From: Octopus sinensis
Taxonomy: Eukaryota
NCBI RefSeq assembly: GCF_006345805.1
Contig: NW_021828165.1
Coordinates: 1 to 8,988 of the forward strand
DNA: 8,988 bases
Direction: 5' to 3'
The notes below the pieces were generated by a model. The model worked only from the letters and a program-made list of their open reading frames with translations. It was not told the DNA's origin and made no database searches. Of this stretch, positions 225 to 8,790 are shown piece by piece. Both the position numbers and the translations under genes were made by a program. Within the stretch, counting starts at the first letter, position 1. Every line of letters starts with the position of its first letter.

Positions 225-395
225 AAGACAGCGCCCTGGAAGAATCGGTAGCGCGCCGGCCAAAATGTTTGGCGGTATTTCCAACTCAAATTCCGCAGAG
301 GTCGGTTTTGCCTCTCATCCTATCGTGCTCGATACAATAAATAGCAGTATTTTGCCCTAGAATTTGCAGGCCTTGTGCCAAAATTTGAAACCAGA
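225..395 (+). mobile_element. Degenerate tRNA-derived SINE copy (octopus-type), internally deleted
   Basis: Aligns by eye to the better copy at 430-810: ctggaagaatcggtagcgcgccgg (A-box region), ctcaaattccgcagaggtcggttttgcctctcatcc (B-box/core) and tail aatttgcaggccttgtgccaaaatttgaaacc. Confidence 0.6.
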
Positions 396-439
396 ATTAA
401 AGCCATACAATATTTTAATATTAGCATAAGGCGACGAGC

Positions 440-947: not shown

Positions 948-951
<4 letters not shown>

Positions 952-982
<31 letters not shown>

Positions 983-1004
983 TAATAATAATAATAATAA
1001 TAAT

Positions 1005-1077
<73 letters not shown>

Positions 1078-1085
1078 GTAATAAT
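952..1085. repeat. (AAT)n microsatellite with a 1-nt slip and one ATT variant
   Basis: (AAT)9, an extra A at about 979-981, then AAT units to 1076 with ATT at 1005, then GGT AAT AAT. Confidence 0.97.
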
Positions 1086-1220
1086 AAACGCAGGCAGTCA
1101 TGTAAATAATTGATGTGATCTGTTGCGGTGTAGTTAGATTGTTTTGACAGTTGGTTTGTGATACCGCCATGTCTATAGTGTTGGCCACCATTGTTCTGTA
1201 CTAACGCCACCTATTTGCAG

Positions 1221-2829: not shown

Positions 2830-3049
2830 GGTGTCTTTGTGGCTGTGTTTGTCTCTCATCAAGTCATGACAACCGGTGATGGTGTGTTAACGTCCCCGTA
2901 AGCTAGACTAGTTAACAAGCTTTAAAAGGAAAATAAATAAAATTTAAAAAAATAATAATAATAACTACTAGTATTGATTCGCTCGACTAAAATGCTACAA
3001 GGCGGTGCCCCAGCAAGGCCGCAGTCTAATCAGTGAAACAAGTAAAAGA
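2830..3049 (+). mobile_element. Degenerate SINE-like interspersed repeat (second octopus family), middle replaced by AT-rich sequence
   Basis: gtgtctttgtggctgtgtttgtc...gacaaccggtgatggtgtgttaacgtccccgtaa and gattcgctcgactaa...aaggcggtgccccagcaaggccgcagtc...tgaaacaagtaaaaga match both ends of an abundant Octopus repeat as I recall it. Not verified by search. Confidence 0.6.
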
Positions 3050-3272
3050 TATTTTTAAAACTTCACTTATTCACACACGGTTCTGTTGAATCAAGCCGCA
3101 ACCCTTGCGCCATTTACGCCCATCGCTCCTACCCAACAAACAACACCATAGTACCAACCGACAAACCAGCCAGCCAACCGACCTAACCCTTACTACGGTA
3201 CCAGACCCACCCGATCGCATGGGTTTTCGTCTTTAAACCTTTCTTATTCAATAAATTGTTTCTGGGTCTCCC

Positions 3273-3274
<2 letters not shown>

Positions 3275-3304
<30 letters not shown>
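3275..3304. repeat. (AC)15 microsatellite
   Basis: Direct reading of the sequence. Confidence 0.97.
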
Positions 3305-3306
<2 letters not shown>

Positions 3307-3357
3307 CTCAACAATAACAAGCAATAACACGCACAAGGAGTAGTAGTACGAGTCCAT

Positions 3358-3402
3358 GACGACGACGACGACGCCGGCGGCGGCGGGCGGCGGCGGCGGC
3401 GG
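3358..3402. repeat. GC-rich (GAC)5-(GGC)n trinucleotide tract
   Basis: gacgacgacgacgacgccggcggcggcgggcggcggcggcggcgg. Confidence 0.95.
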
Positions 3403-3520
3403 TAACAACACATTGTTATCATCCCTGCCCTCTTGTAACACATGTAAACTACTTCAGCACCTGGGGGTAGGTCGAGGTAGAATAAAAATTCGCCGCAGGG
3501 ATTCTTCCAGGGGTATATTG

Positions 3521-3529
3521 TATATAAAG
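3521..3529 (+). promoter_or_regulatory. Possible TATA box
   Basis: TATATAAAG with GC-rich flanks, next to a CpG-rich segment. Motif match only. Confidence 0.2.
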
Positions 3530-3567
3530 GGCCGCTGGATAACACAGAATGAGAAGCCGAGGAGAAC

Positions 3568-3597
3568 GATACATACATACATACATACATACATACA

Positions 3598-3642
<45 letters not shown>

Positions 3643-3690
3643 TGTGTGTATGTATGTATGTTATGAGTGCATCTGTGTGTATGTGTGTGG
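3568..3690. repeat. (ATAC)n-(TA)n-(TATG)n compound microsatellite
   Basis: Direct reading of the sequence. Confidence 0.95.
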
Positions 3691-3854
3691 ATACAGAGAA
3701 GAAAGAACTTGATAAGAGGGGGTGGATTGAGGGTGCTTTGTTTGGTGTGGTTGTGTGTGTGGGCAGATGGGTGTGTGCGCGTGCGTACGTGTGTGTCGGG
3801 GGGAGTTTTTTCATTTCTCTTGAATGAGAAACTGTTTTAGAGTTTGTGCATGCT

Positions 3855-3938
3855 TCTCTCTCTCCCCACTCTCTCCCCCCTCTCTCTCTCACTCTCTCTC
3901 TCTCTATCTATCTATCTATATATATATATATATATACA

Positions 3939-3972
<34 letters not shown>

Positions 3973-4016
3973 CATGCATACTACATACATACATACATAC
4001 ATACATACATACATAC
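3855..4016. repeat. (CT)n-(TCTA)n-(TA)n-(CATA)n compound microsatellite
   Basis: Direct reading of the sequence. Confidence 0.95.
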
Positions 4017-4702
4017 AAATACTGATGCATATGTACTTACATACATATACATATATATATACAAAACCAGAAAGAAGAAAGCGAATTCGAAGACCACAGA
4101 TCTACTCCATCAATGGAACTGTAAAAGTCTGTAAAACTTTCCTGAAGTTTACCATTTAAATATATATGAGCATGTCTAGATATGCAACTATATGCATGAG
4201 GATATATACACAAAGCAAATAAACAATTCTGGATACATAAATTCATACAAAAATTCCTTGTTGAACGAAAATCTACGTTTTCAGATTCTCAACATTCAAC
4301 AAAACGCCACTTTTATATATATATATATATATATAAAAGTGGCGTTTTGTTGAATGTTTGAGAATCTGAAAACGTAGATTTTCGTTCAACAAGGAATTTT
4401 TGTATGAATTTATGTATCCAGAATTGTTTATTTTGCTTTGTGTATATATCCTCATGCATATAGTTGCAAATCTAGACATGCTCATATATATTTAAATGGT
4501 AAACTTCAGGAAAGTTTTACAGACTTTTACAGTTCCATTGATGGAGTAGATCTGTGGTCTTCGAATTCGCTTTCTTCTTTCTGGTTTTGTATATATATAT
4601 GTATATGTATGTAAGTACATATACATCAGTATTTGTATGTATGTATGTATGTATGTATGTATGTATGTATGTATGTATGTATGTATGTATGCATGTATGT
4701 AT
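3965..4702. repeat. Long spacer-less inverted repeat (palindrome), centre 4324/4325
   Basis: 4017-4324 is the reverse complement of 4325-4634 except for two 1-nt homopolymer indels (extra T at about 4358 and about 4432) and two substitutions (4182/4469, 4028/4623). Symmetry continues into the (CATA)n/(TATG)n flanks. Confidence 0.97.
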
Positions 4703-4726
4703 GTGTTCATGTATGTATGTGTTCAT
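4635..4726. repeat. (TATG)n microsatellite ending in a 16-bp tandem duplication (gtatgtatgtgttcat x2)
   Basis: Direct reading of the sequence. Confidence 0.93.
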
Positions 4727-4999
4727 GCATAGAACCCGTGTTCGCTTATGTTAATATTCTGAACGCTTAATAAACAGTGGAGTGGTTTATGAGGCTGCTA
4801 CGTAGTGATTCATCAAACAGGAACGACAAAATTTCCTAGACTTATTTATTTGATCTACATATTCGGCTAAAACTCACAAAAGGAGTATCACAGTATGGCT
4901 GCATTACAATGACTACGATTAGTCATTTATATATATGCATACATACACACACACATATACATGTGTGTGTGTTTGTATATATATATATATATATTAAGG

Positions 5000-5108
5000 T
5001 ATGTAGAAAAATACAACATGGACAAGAACGTATAACTCTTAGAAGACGATACAATAAACATGGACAGGACATTCGAACCCCTCAGTCTTCAGTCAAGAAC
5101 CGGATCAT
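5000..5108. mobile_element. Fragment of an interspersed repeat between two (TA)n tracts
   Basis: acaacatggacaagaacgtataactcttagaagacgatacaataaacatggacaggacattcgaa...cagtcttcagtcaagaaccggatc resembles a common Octopus repeat from memory. Internal direct repeat aacatggaca. Class unknown. Confidence 0.35.
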
Positions 5109-5744
5109 ATATATATATATATATATATGTATATACGTTTCCAAACGTAAGTAAGAGAGCTCAATACATGTTGCGGGGTGCATTTGTATTTGTCGAAGAA
5201 GGTGACTCACTCTGTCGCTATGCACGGCCATTTTGAATGATTTCCTTAACCAATAGCTTTGCGCAATCTCCTACTGCGATCATACGACAACATACGACGA
5301 GCAGGTTCTCATTTTTTTCACTACATAACCTACACAGGAATCATATGACTTTCCGCCCTATCCTTCTCCTTCCCCACTTTTTTCTACACACTCTTTTTTA
5401 TAATTTGTTCTTGCAAGTTAATGATGAAAGAAACTTTTTTTTACGTCTGGAATCTGTTAGACTTTAACCATTCCTCCCAATTTTTTGTCTTCAGAGAAGT
5501 TGTTGACGAGATCACCCTGTAAAGTTTTCTCTTATTAGAGCTAAAGCATTTTTTCACCTCTTAGCTTTTTTCTATATTCTATCAGAATCCTTTTATATAT
5601 ACACCGTTCTTTCTTATTCTAATTTCTCAATCACCAAATTTTACGTCATTTTTTCTTCTCATTTCTTTTGTTTTTTTCAATTTTGAGTATTAATTCTTCA
5701 TTTTTTACCGTATTTCTTTCTCTCACGAGCTATACATAGATACG

Positions 5745-5965
5745 CACACACACACATACATACATACATACATACATACATACATACATACATACATACA
5801 TACATGCATGCATACATACATACACATACATGCTTGTGTATGTGTATTTACATGCATTTATATATGTACACATAACTCACACGTATATATATACATATAT
5901 ATATGTATGCATATATATTTGTGTGTATGTGCGTATATATATACGTATACGTGTGCACATATACA
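5745..5965. repeat. (CATA)n and degenerate TA/TG microsatellite
   Basis: Direct reading of the sequence. Confidence 0.93.
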
Positions 5966-6140: not shown

Positions 6141-6231
6141 CATCATCCCAGTGCAACTTGAACTCCTGTCTTCCTCCATCTGTCGTATCCATACTAATCA
6201 ATGTTTTGTATTATGATATTTTTTATTATAA

Positions 6232-6390
6232 TTTGCCTTTGATCCTTTCAAGTTTGATAAATTAAGTACCAGTTGCGTACTGGGGTCGATCTAATCGACT
6301 GTCAACCACCCAAAAATTTCAGGCCTTGTGACTAGTTCAAATTCTGAGTTCAAATTCCGCTGAGGTCGATTTTGCCAAGTACTGGTGTAG
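6232..6390 (+). mobile_element. Rearranged SINE fragments of the 430-810 family
   Basis: tttgcctttgatcctttc...gataaattaagtaccagttgcgtactggggtcgatctaatcgact, then tail aaaatttcaggccttgtgactag, then B-box segment gagttcaaattccgctgaggtcgattttgcc. Confidence 0.75.
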
Positions 6391-6693
6391 ATTAAATTGG
6401 CTAAGACACTTCTCCCACACACTTTTCGCTTTGTATTTAGAAAACAACTGTCGATTGTTCTTTCGTCACAAGATTCTGCTCGATCTAAACCACCCTCTAT
6501 TATATAGTTGTGGTTTTCCTCTGTATTTCACCTTTCCAAATGCCCCAATGACTGAGGCCTCTCTGTTCAATAAAAGAAATATTGAAAATAATCAGAACCA
6601 GCAAATTTCAGAAGGTCGGTTGGTAGCCTCATGCAACAGGTACATCGTCTCATTTTTACGGGAGGTAAAGCTAACCTGTGACTTCATAAGCCT

Positions 6694-6790
6694 CTGAGGT
6701 TGACTTTGCCTTTCACCTTTTGGAGTTCGAGAGAGCGCCACACAATTGTATACTGGGGCCGAACTTTCTGGCCAAAATTAAAAACCATTA
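6694..6790 (+). mobile_element. Short SINE fragment of the same family
   Basis: gaggttgactttgcctttcaccttttggagttcga...atactgggg...aaaattaaaaaccattatt. Confidence 0.5.

Positions 6791-6961: not shown

Positions 6962-8790
<1,829 letters not shown>

What the first reader, a model, noticed from the sequence alone, without database searches (positions are those of the whole stretch)
3965..4702. About 740-bp zero-spacer palindrome with microsatellites at the centre and both outer junctions
Seen: about 310 bp of non-repetitive sequence is duplicated head-to-head around a self-complementary (TA)n tract. The arms differ by only 2 substitutions and two 1-nt indels, and symmetry ends inside (CATA)n/(TATG)n arrays, after which unique sequence resumes. 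Established: spacer-less palindromes extrude cruciforms, are unstable, and give long dsRNA if transcribed; coleoid cephalopods have very active ADAR editing. Inference: it formed by fold-back at (TA)n and re-entry at a (TATG)n tract (microsatellite-guided template switching), or it is a foldback/MITE-like element. If it lies in an intron it would be a 300-bp hairpin substrate for ADAR or Dicer. A long-read or amplification fold-back artefact is a real alternative.
Basis: partly seen in the sequence, partly recalled or inferred. Interest (0 to 1): 0.7.

Follow-up and report, generated by a model that had tools for sequence, protein, structure and literature searches.

The report
Young spacer-less DNA palindrome in repeats
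A roughly 750-bp stretch of non-coding, repeat-rich animal DNA reads almost identically on both strands around a (TA)11 centre; it is a real but ordinary kind of feature (a recent inverted duplication or a foldback-type mobile element), with no evidence of a function.

Summary
Two arms of about 300 unique bp (4016-4313 and 4336-4635) face each other across a (TA)11 tract, with the axis at 4324|4325 and no spacer. They differ by 2 substitutions and two 1-nt indels (98.7% identity). Symmetry fades out inside (CATA)n/(TATG)n arrays. The strand folds into a ~390-bp hairpin (z about -67).

The arm is non-coding. It has no relative in any collection I could search, matches no curated RNA family, and has no other copy in the window. 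The surroundings are SINEs, a decayed LINE and microsatellites.

Origin cannot be settled from this window:
- I lean to a local fold-back/template-switch duplication seeded at the self-complementary (TA)n (0.4).
- A new observation keeps a foldback/MITE-like insertion alive (0.3): an 8-bp direct repeat, CATGCATA, brackets the palindrome, and its left copy ends exactly at a register break in the left array (chance about 0.03, post hoc).
- An assembly artefact is less likely (0.15), because the outer arrays differ in length, register and variant units.

It does not meet the PATRR composition criterion (71.5% AT against more than 90%). The dsRNA/ADAR/Dicer role and the cephalopod origin are untested. 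Low-to-moderate interest; a new member of a known kind.

The parts
4016..4313 (.). Left arm, unique (non-microsatellite) part, 298 nt, about 69% AT
   Evidence: alignment to the reverse complement of the right arm; composition; no other copy in the window
4314..4335 (.). Central (TA)11 tract holding the symmetry axis (4324|4325); there is no spacer, and the 4-nt loop forms only on folding
   Evidence: TRF: period 2, 11 copies, 100% matches; axis; perfect core 4291-4358; fold
4336..4635 (.). Right arm, unique part, 300 nt; carries the two extra T (4359, 4434) and the two substitutions (4469, 4623) relative to the left arm
3981..4015 (.). Left inner array, CTA(CATA)8, continuous with the arm; its register differs by 1 nt from the array further left
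   Evidence: CATA phase 0 from 3984 to 4012; phase 1 up to 3977
3937..3980 (.). Left outer array, (CATA)8 TATA CATG CATA. It is either the outermost part of the palindrome or flanking target sequence, and it is in register with the (TATC)3(TA)n to its left
4636..4723 (.). Right array: 13 pure TATG units, a 14th within TATGCATG, then degenerate units including a 16-nt duplication CATGTATGTATGTGTT x2 (4692-4723). It keeps one register throughout and is 55 nt longer than the mirror of 3981-4015
   Evidence: period 4, 21.8 copies, 0% indels
3973..3980 (+). Left copy of the 8-bp direct repeat CATGCATA (candidate target-site duplication); it ends exactly at the register break
4724..4731 (+). Right copy of the 8-bp direct repeat CATGCATA, immediately followed by unique flank (GAACCCGTG...)
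   Evidence: chance of this 8-mer in the 60-nt zone: 0.023-0.029
4688..4695 (+). TATGCATG, the mirror image of the left CATGCATA, 363 nt from the axis against 344 nt for the left copy. It argues that the left 8-mer could lie inside the palindrome
3855..3936 (.). Left flanking compound microsatellite (CT)n (TCTA/TATC)n (TA)n. It is not mirrored on the right, so it lies outside the palindrome

Best explanation
This is a genuine, evolutionarily young, spacer-less DNA palindrome in non-coding, transposon- and microsatellite-rich DNA. It was made by one local inverted duplication.

Inferred sequence of events. The ancestral locus carried one copy of the ~300-bp segment, in the orientation of today's right arm. 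A (CATA)n(TA)n compound microsatellite lay on its left and a (TATG)n array on its right. During replication or repair synthesis the nascent 3' end stalled in the self-complementary (TA)n tract and folded back on itself. It then copied the newly made arm and about nine array units. Finally it re-annealed, one base out of register, to the complementary (CATA)n array of the original template and continued.

The result is the order seen today: flank, (CATA)n, a register break, (CATA)8, arm, (TA)11, arm', (TATG)n, flank. Later events added 2 substitutions, 2-3 single-base slips and a change of about 4 units in array length.

Function. It has no demonstrated function. What it does is structural. As DNA it can extrude a cruciform or form a hairpin on single strands, because the alternating AT centre and perfect central symmetry favour this. 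It should therefore be a site of replication stalling, breakage and centre-deleting polymorphism. If it happens to be transcribed it would give a ~390-bp perfect hairpin RNA.

Shown: the structure, its near-identity, its fold, its non-coding nature and the register asymmetry. Inferred: the mechanism, its direction and its age.
For: - Structure and significance.
- The axis is a self-complementary (TA)11, and both limits lie in arrays that are reverse complements of each other. These are the places where a nascent strand can fold back and re-anneal by repeat homology.
- The left array has a 1-nt register break at 3980|3981, while the right array keeps one register into the unique flank. That is the pattern expected if the left arm is the copy and 3980|3981 is the re-entry junction.
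- The arm has no other copy in the window. Its two longest ORFs have no relative among 5.8 billion proteins or 1.84 billion representatives. Exact arm 25-29-mers are absent from the JGI metagenome, GTDB and IMG/VR collections. So there is no positive sign of a repeat family.
- The outermost ends are not a clean terminal inverted repeat, and the right arm carries 55 extra nt.
- Smaller self-complementary compound microsatellites, such as (ATAC)8(TA)17..(TATG)3 at 3569-3662, occur nearby. The postulated ancestral flanks are therefore typical of this region.
- Template switching that creates perfect inverted repeats, and fold-back priming at short inverted repeats, are established mutational processes (PMC7954356; PMC7467729 and PMC10622511).
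- Arm divergence is 0.69% (Poisson 95% CI 0.08-2.5%), which fits a recent event. That is about 1 My (0.1-3.4 My) if the octopus calibration JC 0.09 = 25 My applied.
Against: - The 8-bp direct repeat CATGCATA that brackets the whole palindrome is not predicted by this model and has to be a coincidence (about 0.02-0.03).
- Documented short-range template switches are mostly tens of nucleotides, not about 350 (PMC7954356).
- The host genome was not available, so the single-copy status of the arm, the key prediction, is untested. The negative database searches say little, because the host genome appears to be absent from those collections: the window's own LINE ORF found nothing above 72% identity.
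- No outgroup or alternative allele was available to show the ancestral single-arm state.
Confidence: 0.4

Rival explanations
1. It is a non-autonomous foldback- or MITE-like DNA transposon of about 743 bp (3981-4723). The element consists entirely of two long terminal inverted repeats with tandem-repeat outer parts and a (TA)n centre. It inserted into the end of a (CATA)n array and duplicated 8 bp of target (CATGCATA). An 8-bp duplication would point to the hAT, P or Mutator/foldback classes.
For: - An 8-bp direct repeat sits at 3973-3980 and 4724-4731. The left copy ends exactly at the only register break of the left array, and the right copy is immediately followed by unique flank.
- The chance of that 8-mer appearing in the right outer zone is 0.023-0.029.
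- The joined flanks give a plausible empty site.
- The architecture resembles foldback elements: long inverted repeats containing tandem repeats, little or no middle domain, no ORF, and 8-10-bp duplications (PMC4079207).
- If the host is an octopus, recently active hAT, Mutator and MITE families are reported there (PMC13282606).
Against: - No second copy was found anywhere, although the host genome itself was not searchable.
- The motif CATGCATA is one substitution away from the pure array and occurs 4 times in the window. Its mirror TATGCATG lies at the matching place in the right arm, so the left copy may be inside the palindrome rather than flanking it.
- The terminal nucleotides (CTACATAC... 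against AACACATAC... on the reverse complement) are not a clean inverted repeat, and the two ends differ by 55 nt, although the interior is 98.7% identical.
- Plain (CATA)n termini would give a transposase little to recognise (inference).
- The test was devised after seeing the data.
Confidence: 0.3
2. It is an assembly or sequencing artefact. The true locus has one arm next to a (TA)n tract. The second arm was created by a fold-back read, or by an assembler turning back through the self-complementary (TA)n and leaving through the common (TATG)n repeat into another locus.
For: - All three junctions (the centre and both ends) lie in low-complexity repeats where overlaps are ambiguous.
- Fold-back reads make up about 0.55-0.6% of ONT genomic reads. 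They can recur at the same place, and their junction sequence is enriched in simple repeats (PMC12870357).
- Both arm indels lie in homopolymers, a typical long-read error site.
Against: - Fold-back artefact reads fold near the read midpoint and are symmetric to the read ends. Here the symmetry is confined to about 390 bp per side, with different unique flanks, so two independent errors would be required.
- The arms differ by two substitutions. The outer arrays differ in register, in unit count (about 10 against 14 units inside the CATG variant) and in variant units, so the arms were not built from the same reads.
- The window has no N and resolves arrays such as (ATA)46 and (TTA)36. This suggests a long-read assembly in which a 22-bp (TA)n is easily spanned.
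- HiFi data show practically no such artefacts.
Confidence: 0.15
3. It is a selected hairpin-RNA locus. It is transcribed, folds into a ~390-bp dsRNA, and is processed by Dicer into endo-siRNAs against a target gene from which the arm was copied, or it serves as an ADAR substrate. This concerns function and is not exclusive of either origin.
For: - The RNA would fold into an almost perfect hairpin.
- hpRNA loci of this general form exist in Drosophila and arise by inverted duplication of target sequence (PMC10317233).
- Sub-threshold hits to hairpin miRNA models are centred on the axis.
Against: - All Rfam hits are far below their gathering scores, occur on both strands, and are matched by similar hits on plain microsatellites elsewhere in the window.
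- The arm has 2-6 stops in every frame and no protein relative, so it is not a copied coding exon.
- No promoter, CpG island, exon or other sign of a transcription unit is seen nearby.
- No conservation data exist.
- A neutral young palindrome explains everything that is seen.
Confidence: 0.05

Closest known systems
Human palindromic AT-rich repeats (PATRR11, PATRR22, PATRR17, PATRR8)
   Same: Several hundred bp long, nearly perfect, with no spacer and an AT-only centre. PATRRs have only 1-3 G/C in the central 20 bp, and here there are none in the central 22 bp. Perfect central symmetry and a long stem are the features shown to drive cruciform extrusion and instability (PMC4940405; PMC1851657). 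It probably behaves like one.
   Different: Overall AT content is 71.5% (arm 69%) against more than 90% for PATRR11/22. The arms are complex unique sequence rather than AT-rich low-complexity sequence. The outer ends are tetranucleotide microsatellites. No rearrangement is known to be associated with it.
Fold-back / short-range template-switch inverted duplications (four-point model; foldback inversions in yeast and human)
   Same: The product is a perfect inverted repeat next to its template. The event starts at a sequence able to form a hairpin, and the return uses microhomology (PMC7954356; PMC7467729, PMC10622511 and PMC3907307).
   Different: The copied tract (about 350 nt) is longer than typical short-range switches and far shorter than chromosomal foldback inversions. 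There is no spacer at all, and both switch points lie in microsatellites. The ancestral state was not observed.
Foldback transposons and palindromic MITEs (Drosophila FB, Tetris, Galileo-like long-TIR elements)
   Same: Long inverted repeats that contain tandem repeats, little or no middle domain, no coding capacity, and a candidate 8-bp target-site duplication (PMC4079207).
   Different: No second copy is known. The termini are plain microsatellite and not precisely inverted. The tandem units are 4 nt rather than 10-220 nt. The candidate duplication is statistically weak.
Drosophila hairpin-RNA (hpRNA) endo-siRNA loci
   Same: A long inverted duplication able to give a several-hundred-bp dsRNA hairpin (PMC10317233).
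   Different: No evidence of transcription, small RNAs or a target gene. hpRNAs usually have a loop and often carry tandem copies of the duplicated segment.

Membership tests
PATRR (palindromic AT-rich repeat) | Several hundred bp, nearly perfect palindrome without a spacer | tested here: met
   Arms of about 345-395 bp, 98.7% identical over the unique part, with the axis inside (TA)11 and no spacer. Definition taken from PMC4940405.
PATRR (palindromic AT-rich repeat) | Extreme AT richness (more than 90% for PATRR11/22) | tested here: not met
   71.5% AT over 3934-4719 and 69.4% over the unique arm, against 63.5% for the whole window.
PATRR (palindromic AT-rich repeat) | AT-rich, symmetric centre (1-3 G/C in the central 20 bp) | tested here: met
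   The central 22 bp are pure TA, and the perfect core is 68 nt. Criterion taken from PMC1851657.
PATRR (palindromic AT-rich repeat) | Cruciform extrusion, size/symmetry polymorphism, breakage at the centre | not testable with these tools
   This needs plasmid extrusion assays and population data. Only the single-strand folding energy was computed.
Foldback transposon / palindromic MITE | Multiple dispersed copies in the genome | not testable with these tools
   The host genome is not available. There is no other copy in the window and none in the protein or DNA collections searched, which do not appear to contain the host.
Foldback transposon / palindromic MITE | Target-site duplication of fixed length flanking the element | tested here: inconclusive
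   An 8-bp CATGCATA sits at 3973-3980 and 4724-4731, with chance 0.023-0.029. The test is post hoc, and the motif is a one-step variant of the array.
Foldback transposon / palindromic MITE | Defined, matching terminal inverted repeats at the extreme ends | tested here: inconclusive
   Within the boundaries set by the direct repeat, the ends read CTACATAC... and, on the reverse complement, AACACATAC.... They mismatch at the terminal 2-3 nt, then match only as microsatellite, and the right end is 55 nt longer.
Foldback transposon / palindromic MITE | Long inverted repeats with internal tandem repeats, small or absent middle domain, no ORF | tested here: met
   Definition taken from PMC4079207.
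Local fold-back / template-switch inverted duplication | The inverted copy lies adjacent to its template, with the switch point at a hairpin-capable sequence | tested here: met
   Zero-spacer junction in self-complementary (TA)11.
Local fold-back / template-switch inverted duplication | Return junction with microhomology to the original template | tested here: inconclusive
   A register break at 3980|3981 inside (CATA)n is compatible with out-of-register re-annealing, but a later 1-nt deletion would look the same.
Local fold-back / template-switch inverted duplication | An ancestral single-copy state seen in an outgroup or another allele | not testable with these tools
   No orthologous locus could be retrieved. 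The best relatives of the window's LINE ORF are at most 72% identical, and the fetched loci share only that LINE with the window.
Long-read fold-back artefact | The read maps to the same place on both strands, folding near the read midpoint, so symmetry runs to the read ends | tested here: not met
   Symmetry is limited to about 390 bp per side, with different unique flanks and non-identical outer arrays. Criteria taken from PMC12870357. Raw reads were not available.
Curated RNA families (miRNA precursors and others, Rfam 15) | Score at or above the family's gathering threshold | tested here: not met
   The best hits over the centre score 49-53 bits against thresholds of 83-119. They occur on both strands, and similar hits fall on plain microsatellites.
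hpRNA / endo-siRNA locus | Transcription, 21-22-nt small RNAs, and a homologous target gene | not testable with these tools
   No expression data are available. The arm has no protein-coding relative and has stops in all frames.

The most novel reading that the evidence does not exclude
The palindrome is one copy of a so far undescribed family of foldback elements whose ends are tetranucleotide microsatellites. They would insert with 8-bp duplications and seed new (CATA)n arrays and long perfect hairpins across a mollusc or cephalopod genome. If copies lie in introns, they would supply ready-made dsRNA for Dicer or ADAR.
Probability: 0.1. Interest if true: 0.5.

Novelty: new member of a known kind. 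Interest (0 to 1): 0.25.

Why it matters
Long spacer-less palindromes are rare and fragile, and they are often lost or mis-assembled. A verified example with both junctions in microsatellites would show clearly how simple repeats can seed and bound an inverted duplication. It would also mark a probable site of structural polymorphism. If instead it proves to be one copy of a family, it would document a transposon type that spreads microsatellites and hairpins. For genome curators it is a locus to check against raw reads. None of this changes current understanding, so the value is modest.

Tried and rejected
- Exact look-up of ten window ORFs, seven of them over the arms or the centre, in the 15-billion-protein collection: none present.
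- Homology search with the arm ORF 4040-4246(-): no candidate.
- Exhaustive HMMER scan with the centre-crossing ORF 4276-4485(-): 0 hits.
- Exact arm 25-29-mers in JGI metagenomes (twice), GTDB genomes and IMG/VR: 0 hits.
- These negatives are weak. The host genome seems to be absent from the collections: the window's LINE ORF found only 48-72% identical relatives on unnamed ENA metaMDBG contigs, and those loci share nothing else with the window.
- Pfam on arm and LINE ORFs: nothing meaningful.
- Rfam: only sub-threshold generic hairpin and microsatellite hits, rejected as evidence for a miRNA.
- tRNA scan: none.
- A CpG island or promoter upstream was considered and rejected. The GC patch at 3201-3500 is a (GAC)n(CGG)n repeat, and CpG o/e is about 0.8-1.3 across most of the window anyway.
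- Membership of the PATRR class was rejected on AT content.
- An earlier idea of mine, that re-entry occurred in the (TA)n tract at 3917-3936, was dropped in favour of re-entry in the (CATA)n array once the register break at 3980|3981 was found.
- The organism could not be identified. The tools give no organism for the ENA hits, so I ran no further search on it.

Full report
1. THE OBSERVATION

Reading 3700-5000 and the repeat scans show the reported structure. A script located the symmetry axis between 4324 and 4325, inside a (TA)11 tract at 4314-4335. The perfectly self-complementary core is 68 nt, 4291-4358.

A global alignment of 4016-4324 with the reverse complement of 4325-4635 gives 307 matches in 311 columns, 98.7%. 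The differences are:
- two substitutions: 4028 C against 4623 A, and 4182 A against 4469 A;
- two extra T in the right arm: 4434 (T4 against A3) and 4359 (T3 against A2).

A local alignment carries weaker symmetry out to 3934 and 4719 through (CATA)n on the left and (TATG)n on the right. EcoRI, BglII and XbaI each cut once per arm.

The strand 3934-4719 folds into one hairpin. As DNA the energy is -418.5 kcal/mol (shuffles -72 +/- 5, z = -66.9). As RNA it is -620.2 kcal/mol (z = -68.9).

2. WHAT THE ARM IS NOT

- Not coding. It has 2-6 stop codons in every frame. Its two longest accidental ORFs have no relative among 5.8 billion proteins or 1.84 billion cluster representatives scanned exhaustively, and no Pfam match.
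- Not a curated RNA. Rfam gives only hits far below the gathering scores, on both strands, of the same kind as hits on plain microsatellites elsewhere in the window.
- Not repeated nearby. Outside its mirror copy the arm matches the rest of the window only through its microsatellite-like first 45 nt.
- Not in the public DNA collections. Exact 25-29-mers of the arm are absent from the JGI metagenome, GTDB genome and IMG/VR collections.

These negatives are weak, because the host genome seems not to be in those collections. The window's own LINE ORF found only 48-72% identical relatives, all on unnamed megabase-scale ENA contigs. Those loci share nothing but that LINE with the window.

3. SURROUNDINGS

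The window has no N and is 36.5% GC. It contains:
- several copies of a SINE with a tRNA-like B box;
- a decayed LINE reverse-transcriptase tail on the minus strand at about 7183-8481;
- very many microsatellites.

There is no exon, tRNA or convincing CpG island. This is ordinary repeat-rich metazoan DNA. The composition is compatible with what is reported for octopus genomes, LINE 12.9% and SINE 11.6% (PMC13282606).

4. THE JUNCTIONS

Parsed in 4-nt units, the left side reads (TATC)3 (TATA)5 (CATA)8 TATA CATG CATA | CTA (CATA)8 CAAATACTG-arm. The bar at 3980|3981 marks a 1-nt change of register: CATA units are in phase 1 up to 3977 and in phase 0 from 3984.

The right side reads arm-CAGTATTTG (TATG)13 then TATG CATG TATG TATG TGTT CATG TATG TATG TGTT CATG CATA | GAACCC. 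All of it is in one register.

Both arrays carry a CATG variant, about 10 units from the arm on the left and 14 units on the right.

An 8-bp direct repeat, CATGCATA, lies at 3973-3980 and 4724-4731. The left copy ends exactly at the register break, and the right copy is followed at once by unique sequence. The chance of that 8-mer falling in the 60-nt outer right zone is 0.029 by unit shuffling and 0.023 under a third-order Markov model. The test was devised after seeing the data.

The motif occurs four times in the window. Its mirror image TATGCATG lies at 4688, 363 nt from the axis against 344 nt for the left copy.

5. EXPLANATIONS

(a) Local fold-back duplication (my preference, 0.4).
- A nascent strand stalls in the self-complementary (TA)n, primes on itself, copies the arm and some array units, and returns to the complementary array on the original template.
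- This accounts for the zero spacer, for limits inside arrays that are reverse complements of each other, and for the register break on one side only. It also accounts for the absence of any sign of a repeat family and for the untidy outer ends.
- Such processes are established (PMC7954356; PMC7467729, PMC10622511 and PMC3907307), although a ~350-nt copy is long for a short-range switch.
- The bracketing 8-mer must then be a coincidence.

(b) Foldback/MITE-like insertion with an 8-bp target duplication (0.3).
- This explains the 8-mer and its coincidence with the register break. It matches the architecture of foldback elements: long inverted repeats with tandem repeats, no middle domain, no ORF and 8-10-bp duplications (PMC4079207).
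- Against it: no second copy is known, the termini are not a clean inverted repeat, the two ends differ by 55 nt, and the mirror 8-mer suggests the left copy may be inside the palindrome.

(c) Artefact (0.15).
- All junctions are in simple repeats. Fold-back reads exist in nanopore genomic data at about 0.6%, with junction sequence enriched in simple repeats (PMC12870357).
- Such reads are symmetric about their midpoint out to the read ends, whereas here unique and different flanks resume after about 390 bp.
- The arms differ at four sites, and the arrays differ in register, length and variants. The assembly also resolves much longer arrays elsewhere.

(d) A selected hairpin-RNA gene (0.05). 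Only the foldability supports it.

6. HOW IT WORKS

Whatever its origin, the sequence has the properties shown to favour cruciform extrusion and instability in human PATRRs. These are a long stem, perfect central symmetry and a purely alternating AT centre (PMC1851657; PMC4940405).

I therefore expect hairpin or cruciform formation, replication stalling, and centre-deleted or asymmetric alleles in the population. This is inference, not something shown here.

It works like a PATRR but fails the composition criterion for membership: 71.5% AT against more than 90%.

The arms' 0.69% substitution divergence (95% CI 0.08-2.5%) indicates a recent event. That is roughly 1 My (0.1-3.4 My) if the octopus calibration of JC 0.09 per 25 My applied and no gene conversion occurred.

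7. VERDICT

This is a real, well-described, statistically unambiguous palindrome of a known general kind, in junk-like DNA. Its origin is unresolved between two ordinary mechanisms, and it has no evidence of function. The decisive data are outside these tools: copy number in the host genome, an orthologous or allelic ancestral state, spanning raw reads, and RNA data. Interest 0.25; a new member of a known kind.

Noticed in passing
window 278-400, 485-610, 669-790, 6186-6290, 6342-6375, 6676-6790 (all + strand): Five to six diverged copies (about 63-88% identical) of a short interspersed repeat with a tRNA-like B-box core (GAGTTCAAATTCCGCNGAGGTCGAC...GGGGTCGATAAATTAAGTACCAGT). The first three are spaced 207 and 184 bp apart, which looks more like a short tandem arrangement than like independent insertions. 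ARAGORN finds no tRNA.
   Followed up: partly
window 7183-8481, minus strand: Decayed C-terminal part of a LINE reverse-transcriptase ORF, broken into three ORFs (8481-8197, 8130-7819, 7482-7228). Its relatives are 48-72% identical at the protein level, all on Mb-scale ENA metaMDBG contigs (ERZ25878469, ERZ25067561, ERZ25067570), one of them with an RVT_1 hit. CpG o/e drops to 0.17-0.5 here against about 0.8-1.3 across most of the rest of the window, which suggests past methylation of the element.
   Followed up: partly
window 3569-3662; 4925-4992; 5732-5824 versus 4634-4720: Self-complementary compound microsatellites recur around the palindrome. (ATAC)8(TA)17...(TATG)3 is a miniature of the palindrome's (CATA)n-(TA)n-(TATG)n frame. 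(CA)n...(TG)n sits at 4925-4992. (ATAC)23 at 5732-5824 is inverted relative to the palindrome's right array 1 kb away (80% over 146 nt). This may reflect a regional tendency to fold-back slippage.
   Followed up: no
window 950-1087 and 8630-8738: Two long trinucleotide arrays, (ATA)46 and (TTA)36, are reverse complements of each other, 7.5 kb apart (108 nt, 96% complementary). They form a distant inverted pair that brackets most of the window.
   Followed up: no
window 3358-3402 (within the GC-richer 3000-3600): A (GAC)5 run followed by (CGG)9, in the only stretch of the window above 50% GC. It is not a convincing CpG island and has no credible ORF.
   Followed up: partly
window 4119-4142 and 4233-4256 (mirrored at 4507-4530 and 4394-4417): Short tandem duplications inside the arm: CTGTAAAAGT/CTGTAAAACT, and the 12-nt unit ATACAAAAATTC twice. 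Small subterminal repeats of this kind occur in some DNA transposons, but here they may be chance.
   Followed up: no
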